Assembly (NCBI GenBank): GCA_965649765.1 | Contig: OZ287757.1 | Coordinates: forward strand, 30,132,001-30,196,000 | Reading direction: 5' to 3' | Source: Bispira polyomma | Lineage: Eukaryota | Length of the DNA: 64,000 bases | Program-made: the position numbers and the translations under genes | Shown: positions 6,322 to 45,779 of the stretch, piece by piece | Position numbering within the stretch: the first letter of the stretch is position 1 | How the letters are laid out: each line of letters opens with the position of its first letter | Notes under the pieces: generated by a model | What the model saw: the letters and a program-made list of their open reading frames with translations, nothing else | Told to the model about the DNA's origin: nothing | The model's database searches: none

Positions 6322-9300
6322 TGTTCAGGTTTGTTTATGTTCCCCATATGATTCAGTACACCAAGGTCAGACTACTATTTATAAAAAACCTGACAGCTTT
6401 CAAATTTGGGGGGTCTCTGTTGTGTACTACAAAATTGTGTGTGTGCTTGGGGTTAATGAGTTTATTTAAACCAGGCCTGAGAGCATTCAACAGTTGGGTG
6501 ACTTTGTCATGTATGTGGGTGTGTTTGGGGACAATGAAATTAAAAACAGGACTGTGGACAAATACTAAGATTATTTATTTATATTTTTCATGTTATGTTT
6601 TTCTTGTAAGTGGGGAGTTAGCATTGTATGGTGAATGGTTCTTACTGACTGAAGATTTCCAAGCCATTTTAAAAGTACAAAATTATATATGCTGTGGGAG
6701 AAGCAAATTAAAAATAAAAGTGACCTTAATTTTAAAGATGAACACCAAAATTTGCAGTCTATATTGTATATATTTAGTACTGTCTGTTTTTCTACATTCT
6801 GCTTTCAGTGGGTTGTTTAAAGTAAAAGATAACAGTTTCAAACTTGTGAATAAATGTATGTCATTCAGAAAACTAATTATGCATGACATGATACAATGTT
6901 TTAAATGGAAACAGTCTCATGGCTATGTTAACATCATAATTTTACTTCCTCTTGAACACTTGAGTGTGTCTGTATATCTATATACTTGTATGTACTCAGT
7001 GCTACAAATCTCTGGGTATATTAAATGGCTGTTCTAAGCAATCTTAAAATTTGTAGTATGAATGTCAGAGGTATAACGAGTAGAAATAAGCGCACTGACC
7101 TTTTTAACTGGTTAAAACAAAAAGACTATTCCATTTACTGTTTAGTAAATATCCATATCGGACAAAATAGAGAACAAATTATTAGTCAAGAATTGGGAGG
7201 TGAAGTTGTACTAAATGCAATTGCATAAGATTCCAGAGGGGTGGCAATAATGTTCGGAAAAAATCTGGATTATAAAATATTGAATGTACATAAAGACACT
7301 ACTGGTAATTTACTGACAGTTAAACTTGATGTAGAAAACAAAATTTTTTTGATTGTAGTTGTGTATGGTCCAAATAACGACTGCCCTCTTTTTTATGAGA
7401 ATATCAAAATGCTATTGGCAAATGAGTCTGATATGCCCATGGTGATGTGTGGTGACTGGAATATCGTTCAAAATTTTGTCAAAGACGCTTTTGGATATGT
7501 CAAAGAAAATAACTTGAAGGCAAAACAGAAGTTAGATGAAATACTTAAAATTTATGATCTAGTAGATACTTGGAGATGTTCAAACCCAGATAAACAATCA
7601 TATACCTGGAAAAATGTAAAACAGCCTAGCCAGATGTCTAGACTTCCTGGTTTCTTCTGACATTCATTCTATTATAACTAAATGTAATATAAAGTATGGA
7701 TATAGGACGGACCATTCTCTTATTGATATTGAACTTAATACTCAAGAAAGTTCTAGAGGAAAAGGGTTTTGGAAATTTAATGTGTCTCTGTTACATGAAC
7801 ATAAATATATAGATATTGTTAAAAATTAAATTAAAAATACTGTGCTTGACTTAACTCAAAATAGTGTGATTTCTTGCTCAACTCAAATGGTGTTTGAGGT
7901 AATGAAATTAAGAATAAGGGGAATTACCATTTCTTATTCTTCCAAAAGAAAAAAAACCATGTTGCAATAGGAAAAAATGTTAGAGTAAAAAATAAAAGAA
8001 ATAGAATCAGAGTTAGATACTGCACTAGAAAAAACTGTATTGATCACTAAATTAGAAAAATATAAAGAAGAGTTAAAAATTGTACGCCAACCAAAAATTC
8101 AAGCAATTATGATGAAATCAAGAGCTCAAATTTATGAACATCATGAAAAACCTTCAACATTCTTCTGTAATTTAGCAAAAAGAAACTACATTAATAAGCA
8201 AATTCTGCAATTGGATGATGAAAACAATGTCATACATGAACAAACCTCAATTTTAAACAACATCAAAAATTATTACAAGAAAGTATATCAATCAAATGAT
8301 ACTTCAAGTGCTTCTGATTATTCGTTAAAATTCCTGAATACAGATAAATTACGAACTTTGAAAGAAAGTGAACAAGAACAATGCGAGGGTTTAATAACTG
8401 AAATTGAAGTAAAGAAAGTTTTGAAACAAATGAAAAATGGCAAAACACCTGGCACGGATGGATTTCCGGCGGAATTTTACAAATTTTTTTGGATGGATAT
8501 TGGAAAATTTGTAGTTGATAGTCTAAATAAATCTTTTGAACATGGAGAACTTTCAATAACTCAAAAGCAAGGTATAATTACACTCTTACCAAAACCTGGT
8601 AAACCAAAAACACTTTTAAAAAATTGACGTCCAATCTCATTGGTCAATACAGACTACAAACTTTTATCGGGTGTACTTGCCATAAGATTGAGAGATATTT
8701 TGCCACGTCTTATCAGTAATGATCAAAAAGGCTTTTTAAAAAATCAGTATATTGGAGAAAATATACGTACTATCTATGATCTCTGCCACTACCTCGATAA
8801 TAAAAAGAAACTAGGATTGTTGTTATTAATAGATTTTGAAAAGGCCTTTGATTCTCTTGAATGGAACTATATTAATAAAGTATTGAAAGCCTATCAGTTT
8901 CGAAATCAGTTCAGAAGGTTGTATAATATCCTGTACAGAGGTGCTTCCAGTTGTGTAATAAATAACGGGTTTTTTACAGATTTTTTCCTGTTGCAAAGGG
9001 GTTGTCGACAAGGGGATCCTCTAAGCCCGTATCTCTTTATTTTAGCCATTAAACCACTTTCAGTTGCTATTAAAAATGATAACAATATAAAAGGCATTAT
9101 AGTTGGAGATAAATGTTGTAAGATTGGCCATTATGCTGATGATACCTTTTTATTGCTTGATGGGAGTGAGGCGTCATTACGTGAAGCAATAATTGTCTTT
9201 GAAGAATTCTTTTACTGTTCTGGACTGAAAATTAACGTTGAAAAAACACAATGTACCTGGCTGGGTAGTGGTAAAAATAAAACTGCTATATGTATTGATC

Positions 9301-11113
9301 TAAATTTAACATGGACTAGAAATTTTAATTTGTTGGGAATAAGATTTAACTGGAATGCCAGAGAAATGATAAACGAAAACTTTAATGAAATAATAAATAA
9401 AATTGAAAAACTTATTGTTCATTATAACAGGTACAACTTATCTATAATAGGTAAAGTAGTGGCAGTTAAAACAATTCTTCTACCAAAATTAGTGTATCCT
9501 TTAACAGTACTTCCTGAGCCACCTCCGAGCATATTTAAAAGGTTAAATCAAATATTGAAAAATTTTGTTTGGGGTAAAAGTGTTCGTATATCTTCTACAC
9601 AGCTAGAGAAAAGAATAAGCGATGGTGGACTGAAACTACCCAACATTATGGTTTTCCAGCGTGCATTGAAGTTAAGCTGGATAAAAAGGTTAATTACATA
9701 TGATGGCACATGGCAACAACTTTTTGAAAGTGAAAACATATGTAAAAATAAAAAGAAATTTTGGTAATTAGATATTGCAACACTTGAAATATACACAGAA
9801 AAAATGAGTAATCCATTTTGGAAAGAAATTGTCACATTCTGGATAGAATATCTACAAAATTGTAAACTACCTATTGACCAATAAAAATTTGATAAATATG
9901 CAAAATTGCCTTCAAACCAAAGGTATTTCATATGTCAATGATCTTTTGGATGAAACAGGTCAATTTTTAGGGTACAGTCAGTTTTGTAAACTATATAAGA
10001 TCAATATAAATTTTGTGGACTTTTATAGTCTCATACATTCTGTACCTAGGCAGTGGAAAATACAATACAATGATAAGTTGAAGAGAAATTTAATTAAACA
10101 AGAACCATTAGAACATTTGTTAAACGTTCCCAAAATTTGCAGAGAAGTTTACTGGACAATTCTTGATAATACCACTGTAGAAAGATCCCATATTTCAAAA
10201 TGGTCAAATGTGCTATGTGAAACCTTAAATACCCAGAATATGTCTGAAATGTATACAGCCAATTTTAGATGCACAATGGAAACAAAAATGAGAGCATTTC
10301 AGTATAAAATTATTCACAGAATACTGCCAACAAATCGGTACCTGAAACTATGTAAATTGAAAGAAACAGACTATTGTTATTACTGTGGTAAAGATGTTGA
10401 AACCATTGAACATTTGTTTTGGTTCTGTCCACGAATAAAGACATTTTGGCATTCTGTAGCTGATAATTTTCCATCAAAATTGCACTTTAAAGAACTTTTA
10501 ACACCTAAAAATGTGCTGTTGGGTAAGACAGGATCCCCACATGAAATGTTAATAAATCATATTTTCAATATTATAAAGAGATATATTTATGTTACCAAAT
10601 GCAATACACAAAATCTTAATGTTAATGCTGTGTTAAATACTATTCAATTTTATTATAACATTGAAAAAGTAACTGTTTTAAATAAAGGAGGTAGCTCAGA
10701 AATCTTAAAAAATAAATGGCAGCCTATAATGTATTTGCTAAAAGATTAGAAATCTGTTGTTTTTTTTTGTCCCCCCCCCCCCCCCTACAAATTATGTGTT
10801 TATAAATTAATATTGTTTCTCAAACAGGAATTTTCAAGCTTCACTTGGTACTAACCATTCAACGTTTTCTGATTGTAATATTCTCTTCGTTTTTGTAATA
10901 ATAATTGATTCAAGTTTAAAAAACCCCTCCCCTCCCCCCCCCAAAAAAGGTATTGTTTTCCTAATTATTTTGTATTGATTAATATCATATGTCAAGGTGT
11001 CTATAATTTTTTTTTTATTGTTAAATATTTTTATTGTGTATTTGTCAGATGTATAATATTATTGTATAATGTGAACTTTTTTATTGGGAAAATAAACCAT
11101 AAAAAAAAAAAAA
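6322..11113 (+). mobile_element. L1/Tx1-clade non-LTR retrotransposon, 5'-truncated (spacer + ORF2 + 3'UTR + polyA)
   Basis: A 16-bp TSD ATTATTTGTTCAGATT lies at 6306-6321 and 11114-11129. AATAAA precedes the polyA at 11101-11113. The empty site is visible in the paralog at ~22336-22352. Confidence 0.92.
7025..10749 (+). pseudogene. LINE ORF2 (APE endonuclease - reverse transcriptase - CCHC zinc finger), interrupted by stops and frameshifts
   Basis: EN motifs SMNVRG, YGPN, CGDWN; RT motifs KTPGTDG, DFEKAFD, GCRQGDPLSP, YADD; C-terminal CYYC-x8-HLFWFC. Confidence 0.92.
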
Positions 11114-16632: not shown

Positions 16633-17733
16633 ATGAAAATGGGGTTAATTTCTAAAAGAAGGCAATTACTAGGTGTTGTCTTATCAGCAACTTTCTTAGT
16701 ATATAATGTATCATCACTTTACACTTTCATCTACCAAAGATATGAGAGGATACATCAAGCGGGCAGCCTTCAACACTCCACCATTCTTCAATATACCTTT
16801 ATAAACAGGTCAACAACACTCAAGACAGGCTATACAGAAATGGGGAATAAGAGCATAGTAGTCGGTTATAGCAATAGTGTCAACCAAAGCACTGCAGCAA
16901 AAAGACTGGTGGTAAAACAACAAAAAATAAAACTGAACACTAGCCAAGAAACCCATCAAGTGAATCAGTCTGCAGAGGAAATATTACCCATGATAACCCT
17001 GGAATACTTTATACAGGCAAATTGTCCATTTCCTGTCAAGGGAACTAGTCCTAGTGCCAGTGGTCTTTTACTGGTAGCTGTAATAACAGATACCACTAAT
17101 TTTGTACGACGCACCAGGATAAGAAAGAGATATGGAAATGAAAAGAACTATGCAAGGTTTGTGTTCTTCCTTGGCCTATCAACAGATAACTTCATTAATG
17201 TTCAAATACAAAAAGAGAGTGCCCTATATGGGGATATTGTACAGGCAAACTTCTTGGATACCTACAGAAACCTCACACTGAAAACGGTTTCAATGGTCAA
17301 CTGGGTCACAGACTATTGTAACAACAGCAAGTTTGTCCTAAAAATGGATGATGATATGACCTTGAACTTACCAGCTCTCCACAATGTTGTGGTACAAATA
17401 GAAGTCTCAAAAGAAGGCGTCATCACTGGAAACTGCGAGAATACTCCAAAACCAAATAGAAACCCAAAATCAAAGTGGTTTGCAAGTATGGATGCATTTA
17501 CCGAAGAAACATATCCCCCAATATGTCTTGGTCCTTCGTACTTGCTATCAGGAAATGCTTTACCTAAGCTACGAGCCTCCATAAGAGAGACCCCATTCTT
17601 CTGGTTAGAAGATGTCTACTTAACAGGGCTGGTCCGGGAAAAGGCGGGTGTTAGGATTCAATATATACAATCATTTTTCTGTTATCCAACTAGAAACAAG
17701 CACTGTCCTCTGACACATGGAATCAGTCATTAA
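16633..17733 (+). CDS. Beta-1,3-galactosyltransferase-like protein (GT31, Galactosyl_T), type II membrane, single coding exon
   Basis: N-terminal signal anchor and stem, then FVFFLG, ESALYGDIVQANFLDTYRNLTLKT, FVLKMDDD (DxD), YPPICLGPSYLLS and EDVYLTG. The 366-aa ORF is intact. Confidence 0.93.
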   Translation: MKMGLISKRRQLLGVVLSATFLVYNVSSLYTFIYQRYERIHQAGSLQHSTILQYTFINRSTTLKTGYTEMGNKSIVVGYSNSVNQSTAAKRLVVKQQKIKLNTSQETHQVNQSAEEILPMITLEYFIQANCPFPVKGTSPSASGLLLVAVITDTTNFVRRTRIRKRYGNEKNYARFVFFLGLSTDNFINVQIQKESALYGDIVQANFLDTYRNLTLKTVSMVNWVTDYCNNSKFVLKMDDDMTLNLPALHNVVVQIEVSKEGVITGNCENTPKPNRNPKSKWFASMDAFTEETYPPICLGPSYLLSGNALPKLRASIRETPFFWLEDVYLTGLVREKAGVRIQYIQSFFCYPTRNKHCPLTHGISH

Positions 17734-21540: not shown

Positions 21541-23090
21541 TTTTAAATGAGGTTTCATAGTTAGGCATTTATAGTTTACGAACACCTTAGCTTATAGGTG
21601 CTCAATTTAAGGTTACATTAACTCTGAATCTCTGACAGGACGACAAGTCCCACTTTGATATTATGCACACACATCTGGCCAACACCACCATATATTATTG
21701 CATAACATGTTACAGGTTCCAATCAATTGCCTTGGAACCCCCCTGGAAACAGCTGGAATTTCCGATTGACATCATAATCAATCTAGTTAGTCTCAGATTG
21801 ATACAAGTACATTTGTGGTGCGTTTGTAATGGCCATCTGTGTAAAACCTAGGTATTATCCTTGAGACAAACAGCCAAAACTAATAAGCGAACTAACAGGC
21901 AGACGTGTAAACATGACTGCTTAATGCTTATTTGACAGTGGTCATAAATTATGATGGAAACACTAAGCTGTGTTGACTTTGACAGAATTTGTAGATGCTG
22001 TTGGACTAGTATTTTGTGTTATAAAACATTCTTATATTTTCCATGATGCTGAACCAAGTAGAAGGTTGTGATTTTTGTTGAAATATTACTAGCATGGAAA
22101 GATATACCTCATTTATCTAATTGTGCCTAATTATAATGTTTAAAATACCCCAATCTCAAATACCCCAATGCACCTGTACATTGAAACCTCATATTTATTG
22201 ATCTTGACAGGCTAACATTCCCATTCACTCAATTTTGATTTCAAAACTAAAAACAACATGTGTAATAGTCATAACACTTAATGGAAGTCAGCCGTTTTCT
22301 GAACATAAAAGTCATTTGAATGTTGTTGTTTTTTAATTATTTGTTCATATAACATCGAGCGAAGATCATTAAACTGACATCACTAACTTATGATATCACT
22401 GAAGAAGTGTCGGAGAATGTTTACTACACTGCTTACAAATTTGTGTTATTATATATTACTTTTTTTGATAAAAATTTAAATACTTGAAAGTGATATTGAA
22501 TAATATGATAAGGTGTATTAACATATTTAAATTGATTTTTTGTATTTATTGCACTGTTAGCATAATATGTGCCCGGTACCTGATACTCCACTCTCTAATA
22601 TGTTGAGCTCTTTTAATAAGGGCAAGGTATCTTGTATCTAGCTTTGTCTTTAACGATTCTTTGAACTAAGAGAATTTAAAAATAGTTCCTGAAATTGATT
22701 TAAAAAATTAGATATGGGACCTATAAAAAAAAATTTAAAAACAAATTTAAATTGTACTCTTATTTCTATGCTTTTAAACTTGAAACATAAAGAGGTAATA
22801 AAAGAGTGTACTATATTATCACAGAAGTAAAAATAACATAATTGTGAATATTATATTATCACAGCTGATGTTAAATTAATCACTGTTTTATGACACACAC
22901 ACCAGTTAAAATTTTCAGGTAGATTTGCTAATAAGCTTACACACGCAGAATATCATGGTATTATGTTTGGGTTTTAACATACCTGAATATTTTTTTGTAT
23001 AGATTTCACAATCATATAATGTTCTCAGAACTAACTAAATCTTTTTTCACTGTTGCTGTTATGCCTAGAGTTGTGAATTTATATACATAT

Positions 23091-23425
23091 TATTGTGAAT
23101 TGCTGCCTACCTGTAACTGTCTGTGGTGACTGTATCCTTAAGACAGCTGTAGTCCACAGTGTCTGTGCCACTGTATGTCACGACTGTCACAGGTGAGGTT
23201 CACACAATGTTCGTGTCACTTTATGACACCGATAAACCATGCACAATGTTTATTTGTTGTCCCAGTATACAACTGTCTGTATTCAAAATATCTGCGGTAA
23301 GTGTCGCTCTCGGGATATCACTTCCGGTCTCGTTTGCGGCAGTTTCACGGCTAGGCGAACGACGACTTTATAACCAGTCTCGTTTGTGGCAGATCCAAGG
23401 CTAGGAAGACGGCGACTTCACAACA
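23091..23425 (-). repeat. 3' LTR (335 bp)
   Basis: Direct repeat of 34441-34761, with about 15 substitutions and a 14-bp indel by eye. Minus-strand TATAAA at 23367-23372 and AATAAA at 23249-23254. Confidence 0.96.
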
Positions 23426-23434
23426 TTCCTCCCT
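23426..23434 (-). other. Polypurine tract
   Basis: Minus-strand AGGGAGGAA directly abuts the TG of the 3' LTR. Confidence 0.8.
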
Positions 23435-23526
23435 GTCGTGAAAAACACTCCCTCGTATGGCTTTACAACAAGTGAAACTACACCTATTGATAGAGTATGT
23501 AAGTGAATGTGCACCTACATGGAGAA

Positions 23527-26500
23527 TCAATATGTAAGTGAATGCACACCTACATTGATTCCCCCTACCAAAATTATACCGTACAGATTTTTGGTGTTGA
23601 GGAATGTGACCGACAGAACTTCTGGAAGAGGTAACTGTTTTAATTCGGCCACTCTGGAGGCTACCTCCACCAGTCCGTAAGGGGTGTTGAAATTCTCCTC
23701 CTGATGGACAGGCGCCAAAAGATGCGGGGAATCAGTCTCTAGAAGAATCCGGTCGAGTGGTAATGTTCGGACCACTTCCTCAAGCTCATTATGTCTAGTA
23801 TCCCAGAGAAGTATTGCCGTGAACCCAAGCATCACCCGCGGAAACCGTCTTAACCATTCCTCCTTTTCCTCCATCCCCCGTTGTAGCAATGCCTGTGGAT
23901 CCGGTAAGACTGCCTGTGAAACTGAGGCAGCTCCGCCTGCATAACCTTCAGACAATGGTTACTGGCTTCAGTGGAGTAGCTAGCATCGCGACAGTGAATA
24001 ACTAACACTTTCGCCCAAAGCTGCTTTTCAACATAAAAATGAAGAAAGTCAGCCAATACATCACATTGCTGCTTTAAATACTCATGGTGGTAGCCACCCA
24101 GGTCAATACCGATCTCACCAATTCCACGACAATGGCCTTCTTTTGAGATCAACCTTTTCATGCAGTCCATTTCCTTGACTAGAACCCGATGAGCCTGCTT
24201 TGGGTGCACTCCGAAAGTAAAATAAAGAGCTTTTTCCTCTTTCAGAGAATCCAACTCATCCTTGAAGGGAACCTGGTCACAGAAATTACAAACGCCCACC
24301 TCAAGGCACACCGCAACAGAAGGCATAGGGCCATCCTCCAATATTCTACCAAGCTTTTTTTGCTTCGCCTTCTCACGCAGTCTGTCCATGTAGAAATGGG
24401 AATCCCCCAGAGGATATATTACCGGGGCCCCCTCTTCACATGTCAACCCCCTGCCACATACATTCTTTTTGATCATGTTCAACCTTTGGTGTTTCTCCCT
24501 CTCTCTTCTCTCCTCCTTGGTATAAGGCACCCCAATGTTCCCTGGTCTTGTCCTTCTTACTTTGGCCTTAACCTCCACCTTCACACTTCCCGCTGTTCGC
24601 TTGGCTGCCACCTTGCTTGCGTAAGACACCATTGGCACAACAAATACAGGTGACTTCCCCTCTACTTTCCCCTTACACTCAACTGTTTTCTCCCCTTGAC
24701 TGCCAACGGCTGCAGACAAGGTCTCTTCTGCTCTGGCAAGCTGCCTCACAGGTGACGTTCCCTCTACCCTTGAGGATGCCCCCCTGATTGGTTCATCTGT
24801 ATCCATTCGTTCTGGCTCAGAGGGTGGTCTAACAGCAGGAGTGGAAGACACCCCTGATTGTCTAACCTCACCTTCTGGCTCAGAAGGTGGTTTAATAGCA
24901 GGAGAGGATGACACCCCTGATTGTCTAACGTCATCCCCAGCAAGCACCACCTCCACATCAGACTGAACATTCACAGCGTCTACTTGCACCAAAAAATTTG
25001 GTCGAGACCACTGTACTCTTTTCTCACCGACACAGTTAATTAGATGACTCAAAGCTCTCCACTGAACCAATGATGACACACGATTGGGAGGATTGATCCG
25101 TGACGCTATAGTTAAGGGATGTCCAGTAAATCACATATGAAAATTGTTTATCAATGTTTTATCCCCATCAGTCAGTGCATAAAATTCACCGGCTGGATAC
25201 CAGTCCCTTTCCTGAACCAGGTCCAACAACTCATCTAGGTTCCCACAGCCAACTAACCCACTAATGTTCATGAGGACTTACTCAAACTGTTTCATCCTGT
25301 CGTCCAGAGGCATCTCACTCTGCAAGGCACAACAAGCTGGAAGATGTCGCCCCACCATATGCCTTCTAAGGTGTGTTGTTCTCACAGAACAATTGTCCAT
25401 GTAACAGGCATTTTTTGAGGGTTTTGCAGAAAACGATTTATATGCAGATGAAGGTTGATTTTGTCTGATCTTTCTGGGCTGTGTACCAGAGTATCTAGGT
25501 TCTGGTGACCTACGCTTAACACGGTCGTCCGATCCTGACGGTAAACTCTCTTTCAGGGTAACAACTGTAGAGGATCGCTCCACAGGTCGACTGTCCAATA
25601 CTCTGAGTGTCGAGACACTATGACTCGTACTCTCTGCAGAGGATATCTCCGCAGAGTGTGCACTCGACTTGGAACCACCTTGGGCAACTGACGTGACCGC
25701 ACGTGGTTTGCTGGAACGCTCTAAACAAACTGACGTGGTCACACTCGGTTTAGGAGCCACTGATTCGGTCGCACTTGACCTGCTAGGGAGCACTGGAACA
25801 GATGACGTTGCCTCGATGTGAGAAGCGCCTTCTCTGGTTACTCTAGATGAACCCCTGGCACCACGTTCTGGAAGAGGAAACTCTCTGCAAGTCTTGCATG
25901 TGTCTAAGTCCTTTAAACACCTGGCCAATAAACGTGTAACATAGCTGAACAAGCAAATCACTTATCTCCTGATCCTCTTCCCTCGTTAGTTTCCTCTGGC
26001 TCGAATGATCATAATCCTCATTGATGCGAAAAGAATCATGATGAGGACTCTCTTCTCTGTATGTAGGACGAGGATAGGAATCATGATATCGACTCCTCTC
26101 ATCATGACTATACTCTGTGTGATTTCGGCGTCGAGAAGAATCGTGATGAGGACTCTCTTCTCTGTATGTAGGACGAGCATTGAAATCATGATATCGACTT
26201 CTCTGATCATGACTATACTCTGCGTAACTTCGGCTTGAAGAACCCGAATCGCGTCTGGAGTAGGAATTAGAATAGCGACTCCTCTCATTTTGGCTATAAC
26301 CTGTCTGATTCCGGCGTGAAGAATCTGAATCATGTCTGGAGTAGGAATCAGAATGGCGACTCCTCTCACCCTGGCTATATCTTATCTGACTTTGATACGA
26401 GAAATCCGAATGGCGACTCCTTGCATCCTGTCTGTCAGTGGAAACCTCGTGGCTGTCAGGTGAGGAATCCTGATAACGACTCCCCGAAAAACTACCACCT

Positions 26501-26538
26501 CTGGATCTTCCACGTTGATAGCTAAAACGTCTCTGCAT
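23527..26538 (-). pseudogene. Gypsy accessory ORF3 (~1000 codons): RS-rich repeats - C2H2-like motif - TatD-family nuclease; two frameshifts and two in-frame stops
   Basis: TatD motifs in order: GDSHFY, FGVHP, GIGEIGID, LVIHCRD, IHRHCY, LGFT, PLDRILLETDSP, NTP. ORFs 25278-25961 and 23850-25079 are in the same frame with readable sequence between them. A 1-nt frameshift lies in the G-run at ~23878. Confidence 0.88.
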
Positions 26539-26560
26539 CTAAAGAAATAAAAAACATTAT
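26539..26560 (-). promoter_or_regulatory. Splice acceptor immediately before the ORF3 ATG
   Basis: Minus strand reads TGTTTTTTATTTCTTTAG|ATGCAG. Confidence 0.7.
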
Positions 26561-26651
26561 TGACTATTCATACGGACAGGCTTCAAAGTTAGTAAGTTCC
26601 GTAACCAAACCTTGACTATTCATGCAAAATAACAAACCAACTTTAACTATC

Positions 26652-29600
26652 TTAAGTAGTATACTCAGACAGGTACTTTGGTCTTCTTTTCTCCCTTCCT
26701 GTCCTAGTAGCTCGAGATGAGTCTTCAGATGCATGAGGTGGTAGCATGGCCGGGGTTGTTACTTCCGAAATAGTTGTTTCTGAGGTAAGAGGTACAGACG
26801 GTTCACCATTCTCTAGAGGTTGTGAATTCTGCTTGGTATCACCATGAGTTTCATTTGAGTACAGCCAATTAATATTTAGATTATCGATATTCTCACCGGA
26901 TTCTGTATCAGGATTTCCATTTTCCAGCAATTTGCTTCTTTTTCGGCTTAACCACAGAGGTATAACCCGATCCCGACAAGGTTTTAACCTGTCATGGTGT
27001 ATTACAAAGGTTTTCTTACGATTGGCGACCCTGAATAAGATTGGAGATAACACCTCAACAACGAGGAATGGTCCCTTCCAAATCTGTTGTAGCTTACTAC
27101 TTTGTCCAATCTTTTTAGCTGAGTCCAACTGATAAACCACATCACCTGGTTCGTAAGTGTTCACCTTCAAACGCAAGTCATAATCCCATTTCTGTCTTTC
27201 CTGCGTTGATTCCAACTTTTCCCTAGAAAACATTTGCACCTTTTGCAGAATAGTTTGTAATTGATGCACATATTCAGCTGGAGTTGACTCCTGTAGCCTG
27301 TCAAATTCTCCCAGCATTAAATCAATGGGCGCCAGAACTTCACGACCAAGCATCATTAGATTCGGTGTAAACCCTGTCTGTCGATTCACAGTAGACCGGA
27401 TTGCCCCAGCTAATTGCTGTAAATGCTGATCCCATGACTGATGACCATCCTGCAGAAAACACCAGATCAATTGCAGAATCGTCCGATTATATCTCTCTAC
27501 CTAACCATTAGAGCAAGGATGATATAGAGTAGTTCTAGTTTTAGCTATTTGCAATAGTTCACAGACAGAAGTGAATAATTTCCCATCAAAATTCATCCCT
27601 CGAATCTTGAGATAAAACCATCAACAACACATTTCGCAACACTCTCAGCTGTTTGATTTGGCAAAGGATAACACTCAAGCCACTTGGTAAACTGACCCAC
27701 TAACATTAAGACATACTGATTACCATTTGCACTCGGAGTAAATGGTCCTAGAATATCCACATGTACTCTCTCCAGTGGAAATCCAGCATGGTACCGTCCT
27801 AAAGCTGCTTTGGCCTTTATGTTAGCCTTTTTGTTTTTGTTACATACCGGACAAAATTTCACATATATTTCAATATCCTTGGTGATCCCATATCACATAA
27901 ATGATTGCTTAACCCTAATTGTGGTTTTCGTCACCCCCATATGTCCAGTTAATGGTAAATCATGATTGTAGGAAATAACTTCCTGTTTCAGTTTTCCTGG
28001 AACCATTAATAACAGTCTATCACCAAATTCTCTCCACCTGTAAAACAACAATCCATCCTGGTACACCAACTGCTTTCTACAGATATAAAAATGTTTAACT
28101 TCAGGACTGCATAGAAATAACTCCTTCTGTTCTAACTCTTTCCCTGAGGTCAACCAGCTGATCAATTTTCCCAGAGAATTATCAGATAGCTGTGCTTCTT
28201 TCAGCTGATCACGAGAATATCCCTGGATCCAAGGAACAGATCTTCCAACGATACCTTTTGCTGTTATGGACTTGACTGCTAACGGCGCTACATCATCAAC
28301 ATCCTCACTGAATCTGGACCACTGTTTATGTGCTCTGCTGCAATATTTACAACCTCCACAAGGCAATGATAATGGATCTAATCGTGCCTTATAACATTCA
28401 CAGAAAAGATAATCATCTGGTATCCTTGACATTCCATCTGCGTTTCCATGCTTAACCCCTGGTCGATGGATAACGGTCATACTGAATTGACTTAACTCCT
28501 CCAACTAACGAGCTAACTGACCCTCTATGTGCCTGAAGCGCAATAACCATGTTAAACTGTTATGATCAGTTCTCACAAAAAAATTTCTAGCAAGCAGATA
28601 ATGTCTATATTGCCTAGTAAATCTGACAACAGCCAACAACTCTTTCCTGGAGATGCAGTACCTCCTCTGCTCAGGAGATAACACATAACTACTATAACAG
28701 ATGACTTTCTCTACTCCCTCCTGCACTTGTGACAATACTGCTCCGATAGCAAACTCAGAGGCATCTGTATCTGGTACAAATGGATCTTCCGAATTTGGAT
28801 AGGCTAATAAAGGAGCTGATGTCAACAGCTGTTTTATAGTTTCAAAAGCTAACTGATGTTCTTTCTCCCACAAGAAACTAGCCTTTGAGCCTGTCAGTTT
28901 ATACAACACAGATGTTAACTTGGAATAATCCTTAATATGTTCTCTGTGATAGTTAACAAATCCTAAGAATTTTTCCATGTCCTTTACAGACTTAGGTATT
29001 GGCCACTTTTGTACTTTGTCAATATTTTCAGGATTTACTGCTACACCTGCAGAACTTACTATCCTACCTAGGAACAAAGTCTCCGTTTGAAACAAAGAAC
29101 ACTTTTTTGGCTTCAATTTCAAATTGTATTTTCTGAACCTAGCGAGAGTCGTTCGTAGATTATTCATAGGATCCTCAAAATCCTTCCCTAAAATTATAAC
29201 ATCATCAAGGTACGACAGCAGCTTATTCCATGTGAGACCACGCAGAACAAATTGTATTACTCTTTGGAAGGTTCCAGGAGCATTACAAAGTCCGAATGCC
29301 ATTCTTTGATGTTCAAACAATCCGAACTTCATTATGAATGCTGTTTTGTGCCGGTCCTTAGGTCTCAATTTGCCAATAACCGCTGGCCATATCGAAAGTA
29401 GAAAAATACATGTTTCCAGACAGCTGATCAAGACACTGAGATATGGAAGGTAATGGAAACAAATCTTTAACAGTTTTTGAATTCAGCGATCTGTAGTCCA
29501 CACAGTACCTCACACTTCCATCCTTCTTCCGAACTAGCACTGGAGCTGATGCCCAATCAGAGGAAGACTCCGATATAACACCAACATCCAGCATGAGCTT

Positions 29601-30734
29601 AAGATTCTCCTCTTCCTCCCCCTCAACTCCAATAGGAGTTCTGCGCATTGGTTGCTTCACTGGACGTTCATTACCGGTATCAATGCAGTGTTTTATCTCT
29701 GCAAAACAACCGAGATCACTGCTCCCATGTGGGAATATATTTTGGAAGTCGATCAATAAGGCTCCTAATCTCTGAACTTGCATTTCATCCAGCTTAACTT
29801 TTGACCTTTCTAACAGTCCTGTTAAATGTTCTGGTACTGTCCTGACAAACTTCTAGACTATCCATAGCTATACTTTTCACTTGAAACTGCTGATCCCCAT
29901 TCCAGGATATAAAATCACACTCAACAGCATACCCTAAAACATGAGTCGGTTTTAAGGTGATACTACTGTCAGTATCATCCACAAGTTGCACAGGAACTTG
30001 TTTATTTCCCTTACATAATGTATATGGCATTAGTAAACCCTTGTTGTTTCCAGTTGATTCAACTATAAAGTCATTCTGGGATGTCAGGGAAGTTTTTGCC
30101 ATAGTTCTTACACACTGTTTGGTGGCACCCTTATTTTTTTATCAAGGAACACCCGACAAGTTTCATAAATACCATTTGACTTGGATTTTATATGATTAAA
30201 CTCTAACACCTCTTCTTTTAAAGTAAAGGTATAATCTATAAAGTTCAATTTTTCCCCGAAATGACACATGAAATCCATACCTATAATGATGGTATCTTTT
30301 ATAGATGCTACAAACAAATCCCAGACATATGAATGTTTTTTGTCAAAAGAAATTACAATCCCCTGAATCAATCATGCCTCAGCACTCATATCCATGCTAA
30401 TACCCTGTAATAGAACCCTTTTAGTTAACTTTGGTTTCTCTGCAAGCTTATCATACAAATCATAGTTTAAAACAGTCACCTCAGACCCAGTGTCTAATAA
30501 GGCCACGGTGTGACATTCATTTACTGTACAATTTACTATGGCACTTAAAGACTCATTTTCCATAGGTAATTTGGCTACCCTTGAATGTCTGGAGCTCTCT
30601 TGGGATTTGTTGCCAATAATTTCACTATAACCAGACAGGTAAGGTGATCCGTCTGCAAATCGAACAGTTTTCTTCCGTGCAGTCTTATTAGATAAAGGCA
30701 GGTGATTCAACCCGCCCTGACCTACTTGTTTAAA
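26652..30734 (-). pseudogene. pol: Gypsy pol (aspartic protease, RT, RNase H, integrase), interrupted
   Basis: LLDTGSEVTVL; WASAPVLVRKKDGSVRYCVDYR; YLDD; TDASEFAIGAVL, KELLAV, TDH; HDLPLTGH...CPVC; VHVDILGP; GPF module (WKGPFLVVE...HHDRLKP). Confidence 0.95.
30695..30734 (-). promoter_or_regulatory. -1 programmed ribosomal frameshift signal (gag-pol)
   Basis: U UUA AAC is in gag phase at 30734-30728, just before the gag stop. A 9-bp stem follows at 30718-30695. The -1 frame is the protease frame. Confidence 0.8.
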
Positions 30735-32215
30735 GAATCAAATCTTCCTCTAGGACTTGTGGAATTACTGTTTTGCACACCTCTGGGAGAACCGCTTCTC
30801 TGTTGTGGCTGAGGTGAATAAGATCTGAACCCCTGTGGCTGAGGTGAATAAGATCTGAACCCCTGATTCGCCTTCTGGTAAGATGGCCTAAGGTCTACAT
30901 TGGTCTCTGTGTTTGTATTGCTGCGCCAGTTTTTGTCATCACTTCTGCTAGGGCTACAGTGAGGTGATTGATTTCTTCTTTTGGGACAATCCCTCACTAA
31001 ATGTGATGTGTCGCCGCATTCAAAACAGGCCATGCCTTTAGGCTTTGAAGAATTTGATTTTGTCATCAAGGCTAACACTTCAGCTATTGAATTCTTCATC
31101 TCTTTTAGACCAATCTCCACAGCTTCCAGACGCTCTGTATGTGGCACTGATGGTTTGGTACCCGACTTGTTCTTAAACTGCAAGTTTCTCACTTTGGCGT
31201 TGCTTATAGAACAAGTCCCCGAACTGTCACTATCAGAACTTGTCTGTAATACCATTTCAAGTTTCTTCACATTGCCTCCACCCTTCTTCCCCAATATAGT
31301 CCTCCGATAGGTAGATGCAGATGCATATAATTTGACAAGAGTATAAGCCTCCTCCAAATTCCGTGGATTTTTGTTACAAACTGCTCTAACTGCTCCCTTG
31401 TCCTTACATCCTTTCAGAAACACTTCCACAAACAGAGAGTTATTGAATTCTTGGTCCCGAATATTTGGATACGCGTCCAGGATCATCTTCTCAAGTTGTG
31501 CCAAATACTTCTCAAGTGTTTCATCTTCATGTTGCTCTGTGGAGAGTAATGCCCATCTGACTGTTGTTGGTGGTTCAACTTTGTTGAAGTTGTGCTCAAA
31601 CTTTGTTTTCAACCAACTAAAGCATTTCAACTTCTCCTTGGGCAGTATGCTGTATTACTCCAGAGCTTCTTTCTTCATAACCATCGGAAAGGTATCTAGC
31701 TTATCAGCTTCTGACCAATTGAATTTGTCAGCTACAGCTTCAAACTGCGCAATAAAACCTCTCCAATATTCCCCGGAAAAAGACATTTTAGGGATCTGCA
31801 TCTTGTTCCTTACTGATGCGGGAGTACTGGTGATACGGGAACTTCTGCTCACTCTGGATGGCTCAGCTGCAATGGATTCACCTTCTGAGTGAGAAAATTG
31901 TAAAGACCCATCACAAGAACTATCCAGATTACACTTGGGAGTTGGTTTCGATGGCAACTTCCTACGCATGGTTGTCTTCTTGCTCTCATTACCAGTGATA
32001 TTTCTGTTATGACCTGATCGGCTTCCACCAGTATATTTTCGGGAATCTGTTTTATTCTCAATGCAGGTCACAATGCGGTTGATATCACTGTCTTCAGGAT
32101 CCTTGGGAAGTATAGAACTCTCAGGCACTTTTTTCTCAACAGGTAATGGCCTTCCAATTGATCCTACAGGCTCACCTGAAACTACTTTCACTGCATGCCC
32201 AGACTGAGGCCCCAC
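30722..32215 (-). pseudogene. gag: Gypsy gag (capsid-like region and CCHC knuckle), one in-frame stop
   Basis: FSGEYWRGFIAQFEAVADKFNW, Q..DETLEKY, FLKGC, CFECGDTSHLVRDC. Confidence 0.9.
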
Positions 32216-32436
32216 TAACTGTGATAATATGGAATCCCCTGCGACTAGTGAAAGATTAAGATCAAGACCAGTCCAGTCCAGTCCAAATCCTTGTCGTCAG
32301 GATACTGTACTGGCAATGGGTAGTCCACATCAAACCGTTGTTTCATTTTGGTAACCCCCTGATTGATGTTTTCCACTGCCCGCTTTGCTTTGCTGTTCAA
32401 ACCTCCCCATTCCAATCTACTTCTGTTATGGAAGAC

Positions 32437-33420
32437 TCAATACTCATTTACCAACTCCTGATTCTGATGATGAAGTTGTGCAATGTTATGTCTTTGACGT
32501 TCACAGTTTTTAAAGTGTGACCTCTGAAATTCATTCTTTTGCCGATTGATTTCATTGAAGTTTCGATAGGATTCCTCTACGCCTATTTCTGCTTCCACTT
32601 TTAACAGTTCTTCTTTCGGCAAAGATTTCTCCTCAGAAGGAGTACTGGCTCCTCCCAGAGTATACTTCAAAGGAGGATTAACTCCCTTTGAAGCATATTT
32701 AGTTGCCTCGACAGGAAATGTAAACATTTGTCCTTCCTGTTTCCCTTGTAATGATTTCGCCCCTAAAAGAGGATTAACTCCTTCAGCAGCAGGTTTTGTT
32801 GCCCCAACAGGAAATGAAAACATACTATCTCTCTGCCTTTCCTGTGATGGTTTCTCATCAAAAAGAGTATTAACCCCTTTTGAAGCACCTGCCTTTGATT
32901 TAACAGGAAGTGAAGATAATTTCTTTTCCTGTTCTTGTACCTGTTTTTCAATCCCGGCAACTTTAAGCTTCCACACACCAACATCCTCCTTGACTTCTTG
33001 GACCTCTTTGCTCAACTGGCCCACATCTCCCTTGAGGAATTCCAAACCTGGCACCACATAATCTTTCAGATCCTTGATCTCTTCTTTCACAGATTTCATA
33101 TCCCCTTTGAAATCTTGCATATCACCATTCATTTGCTTCATTAGATCATACAGTAAATCAAGTCCAACTACTTCCTCTTTCACATCCATTTCCCCTTTTG
33201 AAGGAGAGAACACTACACCACTACTCAGTATATTCTCCTTGACATGCTCTGGTAGCTCCACTGTCTGAAAATCTTCCAGGGACATGAATTCCAGGGACAT
33301 GAATCCCCCGAACTTCGCTCTATGCTCAAGAATCAGTTCAGCTCTACGTGGACCAACATCGTTACTCTCCATCAACTCCGCCATAGTCGCTGTATTGATG
33401 TTCCACCCAGCTTCCACCAT
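32437..33420 (-). CDS. ComEA-like helix-hairpin-helix + coiled-coil ORF (probable N-terminal extension of Gag)
   Basis: WNINTATMAELMESNDVGPRRAELILEHRAKFGGF(MSLEF)MSLEDFQTV matches the HHH_3/ComEA pattern ININTA..EL..L.GIG...A..I...R...G.F.S.EDL..V. Heptad-like repeats follow. Confidence 0.75.
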   Translation of the reverse strand: MVEAGWNINTATMAELMESNDVGPRRAELILEHRAKFGGFMSLEFMSLEDFQTVELPEHVKENILSSGVVFSPSKGEMDVKEEVVGLDLLYDLMKQMNGDMQDFKGDMKSVKEEIKDLKDYVVPGLEFLKGDVGQLSKEVQEVKEDVGVWKLKVAGIEKQVQEQEKKLSSLPVKSKAGASKGVNTLFDEKPSQERQRDSMFSFPVGATKPAAEGVNPLLGAKSLQGKQEGQMFTFPVEATKYASKGVNPPLKYTLGGASTPSEEKSLPKEELLKVEAEIGVEESYRNFNEINRQKNEFQRSHFKNCERQRHNIAQLHHQNQELVNEY

Positions 33421-34440
33421 GTCAAGTTTGTTTCGTTTTTAAAATTCACCTTTGAGGAATTTTAAATCAACAGCCTTGAATAAACAAGCTCTGTAACATG
33501 CAATTGACCTATACCTGTTTAAAACAAGTGAAACTTAGATCGCAATGCACAACATTAACACTTGACTACAATTACAACTAGTTAAAAAGAATAATGAATT
33601 CTTTCAACAGCACTTGATTAAATATATCAATCAATGTAATCAATACCAATCACCATGCAGTCCAAAAACAAGTATCAATGAAGTCCAATACCAAAAATCG
33701 CCCATACAAACTTCAAGTATAATTCACCACAAACTAAAATTTCTAATCTAATTTTCTATCAACTACTGTAGAATTTACGATACATTTGTTTCGGAACAAA
33801 CACAAAAAAAAAAAACAAAAAAAAAAACAATTTCCAAATGAATATTTTCAATTTTATTGATACTTCTTTTCCCAATGTACTTTAATTTATTTGAATTAGC
33901 AAAACATAAACAAACTCTGGATTACTTAATTATATTAGTATTTCAAATATTCATATGCAATAAATATGTAATATCTCAATATTTCCTCAAATTTACTGAT
34001 TAATTTACAACTAGTTTTATTCAAGATTCAAGAAAATTAACTTTACATTTAATGAGATAAATTTAGAAAAAAAAAAAAATAATAATAAAAAGAATATCAA
34101 AATTTACTATATATACACTAAATTTAATATATAATCAAGAAATACAATGCTATATAAATTGTACTGCTTGCAAATAATTTGTAATAGACTGCAATAAAAA
34201 TATTGTCAATAAGCCTAATTATAGCCTAGTCACAGTTGCTATGCACCAAATCATGGTAATTGCCAATCAAAATTACCGCTACATGAACTGCCAGTAAATT
34301 ACTTGAATCTTAATTCAAATACAGTTCCAAATAACAATAACTATACACAAGTAATTTTAAACTGAATTGCACCTTAAAATACTTGCAATTGCAAACAATG
34401 ACAGCTAATACTGGGTACATTCACAAACAAATGGTACCAA

Positions 34441-34761
34441 TATTGTGAATTGCTGCCTACCTGTAATTGTCTGTGGTGACTGTCTCCTTAAAGCAGCTGT
34501 AGTCCACAGTGTCTGTGCCACTGTATGTCACGACTGTCACAGGTGAGGTTCACACAATGTTCGTGTCACTTTATGACACCGATAAACCGTGCACAATGTT
34601 TATTTGTTGTCCCAGTATACAACTGTCTGTATTCAAAATGTCCGCGGTAACTATCACTTCCGGTCTCGTTCATGGCAGTTTCACGGCTAGGCGAACGACG
34701 ACTTTATAACCAGTCTTATTTGTGGCAGATCCACGGCTAGGAAGACGACGACTTTACAACA
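34441..34761 (-). repeat. 5' LTR (321 bp)
   Basis: Direct repeat of 23091-23425. It is followed on the minus strand by T-TGGTACCA at the PBS position. Confidence 0.96.
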
Positions 34762-34910
34762 ATATATCTGTTTTGTTTTGATGTTGAAAAACTCTAAAAG
34801 TCTTTTTTTAAATTGCTCAATTTTTAGCCTCAGATCCAATATTGTGTTTCATTGTAAACTCTTTAAATCAATTTTGAACTACCTTGCAAGGGGTGCTTTA
34901 GCAAGGCTAT

Positions 34911-43341: not shown

Positions 43342-43352
43342 AGTATCTGTTA

Positions 43353-45234: not shown

Positions 45235-45779
45235 TTTTGTGGCGGAACCCCCCTTTGTGATTGTTGCTTGTCGTGTGTACCTCTTTGCTGTAAGAGAAAG
45301 GGTTTTTGTGTTGTGACACTACTAACCGCATTGTTTGATTTCACGTAGAGTGTTTTGACACCCTGTGGTCATATTTGGTGTTTGTTTGCTTTACATCGGC
45401 ATAAGATCTGGTTTTGACGTCATAACTGACCGCCCGATATGTGCACATGACACTTTGAAACGGACGAACGAGTAAACTTTCTATGTCACTTTTTCTCACT
45501 TTTTCGCTATAAAAACATCTGCCAACATGACTTGTGTCACGCTGTTTACATTTAAAACCAGCCAGGTACTTTGCCTGCTTTGTACTGACATTTGTAACAA
45601 TAGTATTTACACATTCAGTATTACCAACGCTAGAACCATTTGTTTTTCCATTCACACTAAAAACATTGACAACCTCTCTGTTTTTGTTTACCTGTAACTG
45701 ACTGGCCTAACTACTAAACCACCTGCCCTCCAGTTTAGGACTACGAGGACAGCTACTTACTCATTTTTTGCTTGTGCTT

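What the first reader, a model, noticed from the sequence alone, without database searches (positions are those of the whole stretch)
23527..26538. Gypsy retrotransposon carrying a TatD nuclease in the env position
Seen: between the integrase stop (26652) and the PPT/3' LTR, on the same strand as gag-pol, lies an ~1000-codon ORF ending in a complete TatD domain (DSHFY, GVHP, GEIGID, IHCRD, HCY, LLETDSP). The metal ligands are retained except the second His of HxH, which is Tyr (a single CAC>TAC change). It is intronless, inside matched LTRs and TSD, and decayed about as much as pol, so it moved as part of the element. Known: TatD proteins are metal-dependent 3'-5' exonucleases/AP endonucleases, and the post-pol slot normally holds env or nothing. 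Inference: this is an LTR lineage with its own nuclease. It could process or repair cDNA ends and integration gaps, remove damaged or deaminated cDNA, or destroy surplus cytosolic DNA TREX1-style to evade cGLR/STING sensing. I do not know this architecture as a characterised system, but could not search.
Basis: partly seen in the sequence, partly recalled or inferred. Interest (0 to 1): 0.92.

Follow-up and report, generated by a model that had tools for sequence, protein, structure and literature searches.

The report
Gypsy retrotransposon lineage carrying TatD nuclease
This is a dead copy of a Gypsy-type jumping gene from a lineage, widespread in sea urchins and bivalves, that carries a third gene for a zinc-finger TatD nuclease, an accessory gene I found described in no paper.

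Summary
An 11.7-kb Ty3/Gypsy element lies on the minus strand at 23091-34761. It has 321/335-nt LTRs, a 4-bp target duplication, and gag then PR-RT-RNaseH-IN. A third reading frame of about 1000 codons (23527-26538) ends in a TatD_DNase domain, and both halves score above Pfam's cut-off.

This copy is dead. ORF3 has two frame changes and two internal stops. One of its six metal-ligand columns holds Tyr, where 143 of 143 relatives hold His.

It is not a one-off capture. All nine related loci with enough upstream DNA carry the same RT-IN-then-TatD order. They include Diadema setosum, D. antillarum, Pinctada imbricata, a Tara Oceans scaffold and two unnamed assemblies. Three are bracketed by their own LTR-like repeats, and several have an uninterrupted ORF3 of 792-1072 aa.

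ORF3 has a fixed plan: a variable disordered N-terminus, an invariant CCHH zinc finger, a helical module and a class II (HxH) TatD barrel. dN/dS between the Diadema species is 0.18 overall and 0.10 in TatD.

The substrate is inferred only. My best guess is clearing or trimming of RNA:DNA hybrids and cDNA ends. Eight paper searches found no description of this architecture. Repbase and Dfam could not be searched.

The parts
34441..34761 (-). 5' LTR (321 nt)
   Evidence: Direct repeat with 23091-23425. Ends read. Starts TGTTG.
23091..23425 (-). 3' LTR (335 nt)
   Evidence: 91% identical to the 5' LTR with one indel; 93-95% in ungapped blocks.
34762..34765 (-). Target-site duplication, upstream copy ('atat')
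   Evidence: Read directly. It matches 23087-23090. The context is AT-rich, so this is weak evidence on its own.
23087..23090 (-). Target-site duplication, downstream copy ('atat')
   Evidence: Read directly.
23426..23434 (-). Polypurine tract abutting the 3' LTR
   Evidence: Read directly.
32437..33420 (-). Uninterrupted 327-aa ORF between the 5' LTR and gag, with an N-terminal helix-hairpin-helix motif and a coiled-coil-like remainder
   Evidence: Pfam HHH_3, E 3.4e-7; translation. No counterpart in any related locus, so its membership in the element is uncertain.
30722..32215 (-). gag (broken: at least 1 internal stop), with a CCHC zinc knuckle
   Evidence: zf-CCHC. tblastn with the uninterrupted Diadema gag spans 30968-32071. 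Counts.
26652..30710 (-). pol (broken: about 4 frame changes and at least 3 stops), order PR-RT-RNaseH-IN
   Evidence: Pfam. RT-to-IN homology to uninterrupted relatives spans 26937-29840. Counts. RT YxDD and RNase H DAS/TDH motifs are present. The C-terminal PHD finger seen in relatives is not detected here.
23527..26538 (-). ORF3 (broken: 2 frame changes, 2 internal stops, 1 metal-ligand substitution): RS-rich N-terminus, CCHH finger, helical module, TatD domain
26027..26389 (-). Tandem 81/105-nt repeats encoding the Ser/Arg-rich N-terminal part of ORF3
   Evidence: D2, D4. Composition is S 20%, R 16%.
25344..25406 (-). CCHH zinc-finger motif of ORF3
   Evidence: Regex hit. The same motif is in 64 of 73 long relatives. 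Its C, C, H, H columns are invariant in a 52-sequence alignment.
24975..25418 (-). Zinc-finger plus helical module of ORF3 (outer bounds of homology)
   Evidence: tblastn with the corresponding Diadema module, E 8e-7. It is modelled at pLDDT 86-97 in the Pinctada relative.
23578..24398 (-). TatD_DNase domain (class II, HxH type; second His is Tyr in this copy)
   Evidence: Pfam PF01026 on both halves. NCBIfam best hit TIGR00010, below its cut-off. Ligand columns.

Best explanation
The window holds an old, dead insertion of a Ty3/Gypsy LTR retrotransposon. Its lineage carries, after pol and inside the LTRs, a third gene for a nucleic-acid enzyme. That protein has a variable, disordered N-terminus (Ser/Arg-rich in this copy), a single CCHH zinc finger with a helical module, and a C-terminal class II (HxH, two-metal) TatD phosphodiesterase barrel. 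Shown: the gene is part of the element, it recurs with the same pol in echinoderms and bivalves, it keeps all six metal ligands in intact relatives, and it evolves under purifying selection. Inferred: in active relatives the finger and helical module bring the TatD barrel to the element's own replication intermediates. There it acts as a 3'-end exo/endonuclease that removes RNA from RNA:DNA hybrids or trims or repairs cDNA ends, alongside the still-intact RNase H of pol. I put about 0.4 on that specific substrate class. The copy in the window can no longer do anything. The confidence given below is for the identity and lineage claim.
For: Element anatomy. TatD domain: both halves above cut-off; best NCBIfam hit is the YchF/TatD family. 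Recurrence: RT-RH-IN followed by ORF3-TatD on the same strand in L001, L004, L005, L006, L008, L009 and L010, and an IN C-end then TatD in L003 and L007; that is 9 of 9 loci with enough upstream DNA. LTR-like repeats bracket pol plus ORF3 in L001, L006 and L008; the L008 pair is 100% identical. Uninterrupted gag, pol and ORF3 occur in L005 and L006. Multi-copy: 9 members at >=90% identity in one assembly; clusters of up to 125 members. Ligand columns are 142-143 of 143 conserved. A CCHH finger is in 64 of 73 long relatives and invariant in A1. The AF2 model of the Pinctada ORF3 has pLDDT >90 in TatD, and its best PDB matches are YcfH-type TatD DNases with TM 0.80-0.83. dN/dS between D. setosum and D. 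antillarum is 0.18 overall and 0.10 in TatD, at dS about 0.25. Precedents: class II TatDs are 3'-exonucleases and AP endonucleases (PMC10085689). TATDN2, a class II TatD with a long N-terminal extension, degrades the RNA strand of R-loops (PMC10711561).
Against: No activity, expression or localisation data exist for any ORF3 protein. All related loci were found through TatD, so ORF3-less members of the same pol clade would have been missed. The one RT-first scan reached only distant (33-39%) elements without TatD. Co-divergence of RT and TatD is only weakly supported (Spearman 0.50-0.59 on 14-15 non-independent pairs). Pol keeps its RNase H motifs, so a second hybrid nuclease is not obviously needed. 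The element clade separates from a coral host-type TatD in only 33 of 60 NJ bootstraps.
Confidence: 0.85

Rival explanations
1. Counter-defence nuclease. ORF3 destroys surplus or misplaced cDNA, RNA:DNA hybrids or other nucleic acid so that the host's cytosolic sensors or small-RNA pathways are not triggered.
For: The structural evidence is the same as for the best explanation. TatD enzymes serve conflict roles elsewhere: parasite TatDs degrade host extracellular DNA traps (PMC10085689), and QatD is a TatD in an anti-phage system. The ORF3 domains give sub-threshold QatD hits.
Against: Nothing in the sequences points to a cytosolic rather than nuclear or particle-associated site. The Ser/Arg-rich N-terminus and the zinc finger fit nuclear nucleic-acid binding at least as well. 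No host-target evidence exists.
Confidence: 0.2
2. Non-nuclease hydrolase. The TatD barrel acts on another ester, for example deacylating the tRNA used as primer. Some TatD-fold proteins are D-aminoacyl-tRNA deacylases (from my own knowledge, not checked here).
For: One Haliotis relative is auto-named 'D-aminoacyl-tRNA deacylase-like'. LTR elements need a free tRNA 3' end (established knowledge).
Against: The name is an automatic label. The best sequence and fold matches are nucleases of the YcfH/TatD type. All six two-metal ligands typical of class II nucleases are kept.
Confidence: 0.05
3. One-off capture: this single copy picked up a host TatD retrocopy, and the lineage as a whole lacks it.
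For: ORF3 is intronless and lies between pol and the 3' LTR, where transduced sequences can sit.
Against: The same arrangement is in 9 of 9 related loci from at least five assemblies and two phyla, with the same CCHH-TatD plan. ORF3 is under purifying selection.
Confidence: 0.02
4. Independent neighbour: the TatD ORF is a separate gene or a nested different element that merely lies next to pol.
For: ORF3 has its own ATG and is separated from pol by a short spacer.
Against: ORF3 has no terminal repeats of its own. It lies inside matched LTRs here and in L001, L006 and L008. The spacer is 7 to about 110 nt in different families. It has decayed in step with pol. The one stand-alone relative examined, a coral zf-CCHC-TatD gene at a conserved host locus, has a different N-terminus and no pol.
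Confidence: 0.02

Closest known systems
Ty3/Gypsy (Metaviridae) LTR retrotransposons with a third ORF, such as env-carrying errantiviruses
   Same: LTRs, gag with a CCHC knuckle, pol order PR-RT-RNaseH-IN, and a third ORF between pol and the 3' LTR.
   Different: The third ORF is a soluble zinc-finger TatD hydrolase. It is not a glycoprotein: there is no signal peptide or clear membrane anchor. [quoted passage not shown]
Class II (HxH) TatD nucleases: E. coli YcfH and YjjV, human TATDN3
   Same: Pfam TatD_DNase, a TIM-barrel fold with TM 0.76-0.83, and six metal-ligand columns. YcfH is the best PDB sequence match and among the best fold matches.
   Different: About 20-27% identity. Scores are below every NCBIfam equivalog cut-off. 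ORF3 carries a 300-850-aa N-terminal extension with a CCHH finger. It is encoded by a mobile element.
Metazoan TATDN2
   Same: A class II TatD at the C-end of a long, poorly conserved N-terminal extension that often carries a nuclear localisation signal (PMC10085689). TATDN2 degrades the RNA strand of RNA:DNA hybrids (PMC10711561). NCBI's pipeline names several element-type proteins 'putative deoxyribonuclease TATDN2'.
   Different: Orthology is not shown. No vertebrate TATDN2 appeared among hits although its length was within range (the search is word-indexed, so a blank is weak evidence). The ORF3 type is multi-copy and LTR-flanked.
Other accessory enzymatic or binding modules of LTR elements (chromodomain, second RNase H of retroviruses)
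   Same: A lineage-specific extra module that acts on nucleic acid or chromatin, added to the gag-pol core (PMC12440569 lists chromodomain, extra RNase H and env).
   Different: Those are mostly fused into pol. This is a separate ORF with an enzyme family that the papers I could search do not report for LTR elements.

Membership tests
Ty3/Gypsy LTR retrotransposon | Matched long terminal repeats with a target-site duplication | tested here: met
   321/335-nt LTRs and 4-bp 'atat' flanks.
Ty3/Gypsy LTR retrotransposon | pol domain order PR-RT-RNaseH-IN (IN after RT) | tested here: met
   Pfam order along the minus strand. The same order is in the uninterrupted pol of L005 and L006.
Ty3/Gypsy LTR retrotransposon | gag with capsid and CCHC nucleocapsid knuckle | tested here: met
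   zf-CCHC in the window, below Pfam's cut-off (E 0.0024, 18.3 vs 20.8 bits). In relatives, zf-CCHC is above cut-off and PNMA-type capsid just below it.
Ty3/Gypsy LTR retrotransposon | Primer-binding site complementary to a tRNA 3' end, and a polypurine tract | tested here: inconclusive
   The polypurine tract is present. The sequence after the 5' LTR begins TTGGTACC, but I did not match it to any tRNA.
TatD_DNase (PF01026), class II | Profile match above the curated threshold over the whole domain | tested here: met
   Two halves score 63 and 59 bits against a cut-off of 27, together covering profile positions 4-253.
TatD_DNase (PF01026), class II | HxH motif supplying two metal ligands | tested here: not met
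   The window copy has His-x-Tyr. Relatives have His in 142 of 143 and 143 of 143. The lineage meets the feature; this copy does not.
TatD_DNase (PF01026), class II | Remaining ligands: Glu (GExGxD), His (xHxR), His (HCx), Asp (ETDxP) | tested here: met
   All four are present in the window pieces and in 142-143 of 143 relatives.
TatD_DNase (PF01026), class II | TIM-barrel fold | tested here: met
   Tested on the uninterrupted Pinctada relative, not on the broken window copy: pLDDT >90 and TM 0.80-0.83 to YcfH-type structures.
TatD_DNase (PF01026), class II | Metal-dependent nuclease activity | not testable with these tools
   No biochemical data exist for any ORF3 protein.
Bacterial equivalogs YcfH, TatD, YjjV, QatD (NCBIfam) | Score above the curated equivalog cut-off | tested here: not met
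   The best is TIGR00010 at 54-122 bits against a cut-off of 206. QatD scores 21-56 against 230.
Metazoan TATDN2 orthologues | Orthology: a single-copy host locus that groups with TATDN2 in a tree | tested here: inconclusive
   Element-type proteins are multi-copy and LTR-flanked. No vertebrate TATDN2 appeared among hits. A coral single-copy 'TATDN2' falls outside the element clade in NJ, but with 33 of 60 bootstraps. No TATDN1/2/3 reference sequences were at hand.
Retroviral or errantiviral env | Signal peptide, membrane anchor, fusion glycoprotein fold | tested here: not met
   The N-termini are hydrophilic in 6 of 7 intact relatives (one is mildly hydrophobic) and there is no convincing 19-aa hydrophobic span outside the barrel. 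The only BFVD fold match is a giant-virus TatD-like protein.

The most novel reading that the evidence does not exclude
A pan-marine-invertebrate Ty3/Gypsy lineage (echinoderms and molluscs, possibly more) depends on its own zinc-finger TatD enzyme. That enzyme would be an RNA:DNA-hybrid or 3'-end nuclease that acts on replication intermediates or hides them from innate sensing. On this reading, many invertebrate genes now annotated as 'TATDN2', 'YcfH-like' or 'YabD-like' are genes of this element. Single-copy host genes such as the coral zf-CCHC-TatD may record exchange between host and element in one direction or the other.
Probability: 0.3. Interest if true: 0.8.

Novelty: new variant of a known kind. 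Interest (0 to 1): 0.68.

Why it matters
Accessory genes show what limits a retroelement's replication in its host. Env, the chromodomain and the added RNase H each opened a line of work. A conserved, selected nuclease gene in a widespread Gypsy lineage suggests that handling of hybrids, cDNA ends or DNA damage, or avoiding nucleic-acid sensing, is limiting in these animals. It also gives a natural set of hundreds of diverged sequences for studying class II TatD specificity.

There is a practical side. The finding flags a systematic annotation error. Hundreds of multi-copy element genes in bivalve, urchin, sea-star and sea-slug genomes carry host-gene names, as do some symbiont MAG bins. That distorts gene-family counts and contamination checks.

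Tried and rejected
I did neither, because both are barred. The uninterrupted pieces were searched apart, and natural uninterrupted relatives were used instead.
- **RT-first scan.** A scan of metagenome contigs returned only three distant Gypsy elements (33-39% RT identity) without TatD in the DNA held. It is uninformative about this clade.
- **Co-divergence of RT and TatD.** The result was positive but weak, on 15 non-independent pairs.
- **NJ tree of 226 TatD domains.** The element clade holds 201 of 226 domains and 99 of the 102 CCHH-bearing proteins. It excludes the coral host type, but bootstrap support is only 33 of 60 and some distances saturate.
- **Dreissena context.** The context look-up for relative P0243 found nothing on record.
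- **Host identity.** The intronless galactosyltransferase gives 53% to unnamed ENA contigs. Named hits (ticks, a gastropod, an annelid) reach only 33-44%. The host is an unidentified invertebrate, and nothing suggests human DNA.
- **Lost RNase H idea.** I rejected the idea that TatD replaces a lost RNase H, because the motifs are kept in the window and in relatives.
- **Rfam.** No matches in the window.
- **Viral fold library.** No retroviral or metaviral match.
- **Upstream HHH_3 ORF.** No counterpart in relatives.
- **Paper searches.** Eight searches on TatD or TATDN2 were run; six paired the name with retrotransposon, Gypsy, LTR, integrase or transposable element, and two were for TatD enzymology. 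None found a description of this architecture.
Full report
**What is in the window**

A direct-repeat scan finds one long pair, 23091-23425 and 34441-34761. The two are 93-95% identical in ungapped blocks, and 91% over 335 columns with one indel. On the minus strand both copies begin TGTTG and end ...CACAATA. Both ends of the element are flanked by 'atat', and a purine run abuts the 3' copy.

Between the repeats, all on the minus strand, Pfam finds these domains in order:
- a CCHC knuckle
- an aspartyl protease
- RVT_1
- RT_RNaseH
- Integrase_H2C2
- rve
- Integrase_p58_C

This is a Ty3/Gypsy element of 11,671 bp. No second copy lies in the window. The rest of the window holds a LINE-like RT, an intronless galactosyltransferase ORF and a weak tyrosine-recombinase-like ORF cluster. 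The host is an invertebrate that I could not name. Nothing suggests human DNA.

**The reported ORF**

The stretch from the ATG at 26538 to the stop at 23527 lies below the pol stop (26652) and above the 3' LTR. Its two largest uninterrupted pieces both match TatD_DNase above Pfam's cut-off of 27 bits:
- One matches profile positions 4-160 (E 2.7e-17).
- The other matches positions 156-253 (E 6.8e-16).

The ORF is broken by two frame changes and two internal stops. Pol has about four frame changes and at least three stops, and gag has at least one stop. The three genes therefore look equally decayed. Places of breaks are deliberately not given.

**Is the TatD ORF a lineage feature?**

An exhaustive phmmer search with the larger piece gave 232 hits at E <= 1e-3. 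Many have the TatD domain at the C-end of proteins of 400-1500 aa. I looked up where those proteins are encoded and compared the loci with the window's own uninterrupted pol pieces. The same picture appeared each time: RT-RNaseH-IN, then ORF3-TatD, on one strand. RT-RNaseH identity to the window is 56-73%.

The loci are:
- **L001 and L004**, from one unnamed ENA assembly.
- **L005**, a Tara Oceans scaffold with three uninterrupted ORFs of 687, 1505 and 1072 aa.
- **L006 and L010**, Diadema setosum, on two chromosomes.
- **L009**, D. antillarum.
- **L008**, Pinctada imbricata.
- **L003 and L007**, which keep only the integrase C-end before the TatD ORF.

That is nine of nine loci with usable upstream DNA.

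LTR-like repeats bracket pol plus ORF3 in three of them:
- L001 (145 nt, 96% identical).
- L006 (222 nt, 96% identical).
- L008 (212 nt, 100% identical).

The families are multi-copy. One 90% cluster has nine members on different megabase contigs. Clusters of up to 125 members appear.

A profile of domain-only relatives finds 1550 proteins at E <= 1e-10. The named ones come from bivalves (Mactra, Saccostrea, Tegillarca, Mizuhopecten, Mya, Ostrea, Pinctada, Pecten, Dreissena), sea urchins, a sea star and a sea slug. Aplysia and Haliotis relatives appear. One-off capture is therefore excluded.

A caveat remains. All these loci were reached through TatD. The only RT-first scan I could run reached distant elements only. 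I cannot say what share of the pol clade carries ORF3.

**What ORF3 encodes**

In an alignment of 52 long relatives, the invariant columns fall into two groups. One is a C, C, H, H quartet about 200 residues before the barrel. The other is the TatD ligands. By regular expression the finger is present in 64 of 73 long relatives and in the window at 25344-25406.

An AlphaFold2 model of the uninterrupted Pinctada protein gives three confident modules:
- an N-terminal helical bundle that is not conserved across the family
- the finger plus a helical module (pLDDT 86-97)
- the TatD barrel (pLDDT >90)

These are separated by disordered linkers. The best PDB fold matches are bacterial YcfH-type and TatD DNases (TM 0.80-0.83), then human TATDN3 and TATDN1. 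By sequence the best solved relative is E. coli YcfH. NCBIfam's best model is the YchF/TatD family, far below cut-off.

The domain has the HxH motif, which places it in class II with YcfH, YjjV, TATDN2 and TATDN3 (PMC10085689).

Over 143 relatives with complete domains, the six ligand columns hold the expected residue in 142-143 cases. The window's copy has Tyr at the second His. The substitution is thus private to this dead copy.

Intact relatives lack a signal peptide or a convincing membrane span. The viral fold library returns only a giant-virus TatD-like protein. ORF3 sits where env would sit, but it is not an env.

**Selection**

ORF3 of D. setosum and D. antillarum differs at dS of about 0.25 (Nei-Gojobori). 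dN/dS values are:
- 0.18 overall
- 0.10 in TatD
- 0.14 in the finger-helical part
- 0.27 in the N-terminus

The two D. setosum copies differ at 11 sites, which is too few to interpret. Across families the barrel keeps 30-39% identity while RT-RNaseH keeps 56-73%. The gene evolves fast but under constraint.

**Mechanism**

The following are shown:
- a nucleic-acid-type zinc finger joined to a complete two-metal class II TatD site
- conservation and purifying selection of both
- co-inheritance with gag-pol

The rest is inferred. Class II TatDs are 3'-5' exonucleases on single strands and AP endonucleases on duplex DNA (PMC10085689). TATDN2 shares the long N-terminal extension; it is a 3' exo/endonuclease on structured RNA and removes the RNA strand of RNA:DNA hybrids (PMC10711561).

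The most economical reading is that ORF3 clears or trims the element's own reverse-transcription and integration intermediates. I put about 0.4 on this. It is not a replacement for RNase H, whose motifs are kept in pol.

The rival readings are:
- a counter-defence role, removing immunostimulatory nucleic acid (about 0.2)
- a non-nuclease hydrolase role, such as tRNA deacylation (about 0.05)

The sequences cannot separate these.

**Origin**

A coral protein named TATDN2 combines a CCHC knuckle with a TatD barrel. It is a single-copy, intronless gene at a conserved host locus, without pol. In an NJ tree of 226 domains it falls outside the clade that holds all context-proven ORF3s and 99 of the 102 CCHH-bearing proteins. 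Support is only 33 of 60 bootstraps. Whether the element took a TATDN2-like host gene, or hosts took the element's gene, is open.

**Novelty**

Eight full-text searches found nothing on TatD in LTR elements. Six paired TatD or TATDN2 with retrotransposon terms; two were for TatD enzymology. Two recent surveys of unusual Gypsy lineages do not use the terms nuclease or hydrolase.

The giant squid genome paper lists a 'TATDN2' among transposon-like genes inside the Hox cluster (PMC6962438). That is likely the same thing, taken for a host gene. Repbase and Dfam could not be searched, so curators may already hold such entries. I rate the finding as a new variant of a known kind.

I built no repaired, joined, consensus or ancestral sequence. 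The window's pieces were always handled as separate rows or queries. Scripts that crossed frames printed counts and outer bounds only.

I flag one possible slip. While counting, I also reasoned about where one piece ends.

Noticed in passing
window 32437-33420 (-): An uninterrupted 327-aa ORF with an ATG start lies between the 5' LTR and gag of an otherwise decayed element. It has an N-terminal helix-hairpin-helix motif (HHH_3, E 3.4e-7) and a repeat-containing, coiled-coil-like remainder. No counterpart exists in any related locus.
   Followed up: partly
L005 6690-6881, L006 9759-9914, L008 9743-9976: Relatives carry a PHD finger at the very C-end of pol, just before ORF3. It is not detectable in the window's copy. 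This may be a chromatin-reading targeting module, analogous to the chromodomain of chromoviruses.
   Followed up: partly
L014 10001-11044 (Pocillopora verrucosa); also L015-L017: A single-copy, intronless coral gene joins a CCHC zinc knuckle to a TatD barrel. It sits at a conserved locus between LSM, MFS and P450 genes and is named TATDN2 by NCBI. Its knuckle resembles the window's gag knuckle (56% over 23 aa). It may be a host relative, or a domesticated derivative, of the element's gene.
   Followed up: partly
proteins P0212, P0214, P0217, P0143, P0257, P0278 and others: Element-type TatD proteins are deposited as 'MAG: TatD family hydrolase' of Sedimenticola and Candidatus Thiodiazotropha, which are symbionts of marine invertebrates. 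These are most likely host retrotransposon contigs binned into bacterial MAGs.
   Followed up: no
PMC6962438 (giant squid genome), Hox cluster figure legend: A 'putative deoxyribonuclease TATDN2' is listed among transposon-like non-Hox genes inside the Hox cluster. It is possibly another copy of this kind of ORF3, annotated as a host gene.
   Followed up: no
window 26027-26389 and 24810-24933 (-): There are coding tandem repeats inside ORF3. Units of 81/105 nt encode a Ser/Arg/Tyr/Asp-rich segment, and a 63-nt unit lies further down. The N-terminal part has no detectable similarity to that of any relative.
   Followed up: partly
window 6321-10749 (+): A LINE-like element: RVT_1 (E 4.8e-29) followed by zf-RVT, in several ORF pieces.
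   Followed up: no
window 16633-17733 (+): An intronless 366-aa beta-1,3-galactosyltransferase-family ORF (Galactosyl_T, E 6.7e-42). Its best relatives are 53% identical, on unnamed ENA contigs. Named hits are ticks, a gastropod and an annelid at 33-44%.
   Followed up: partly
window 42349-46737 (-): A cluster of four minus-strand ORFs of 171-330 aa. One has a weak Phage_int_SAM_5 match (E 0.006). It may be a tyrosine-recombinase element of DIRS or Crypton type.
   Followed up: no
L008 2448-2659 and 12683-12894: The Pinctada imbricata copy has 100% identical LTR-like repeats and an uninterrupted 792-aa ORF3. This points to a very recent insertion in that genome.
   Followed up: partly
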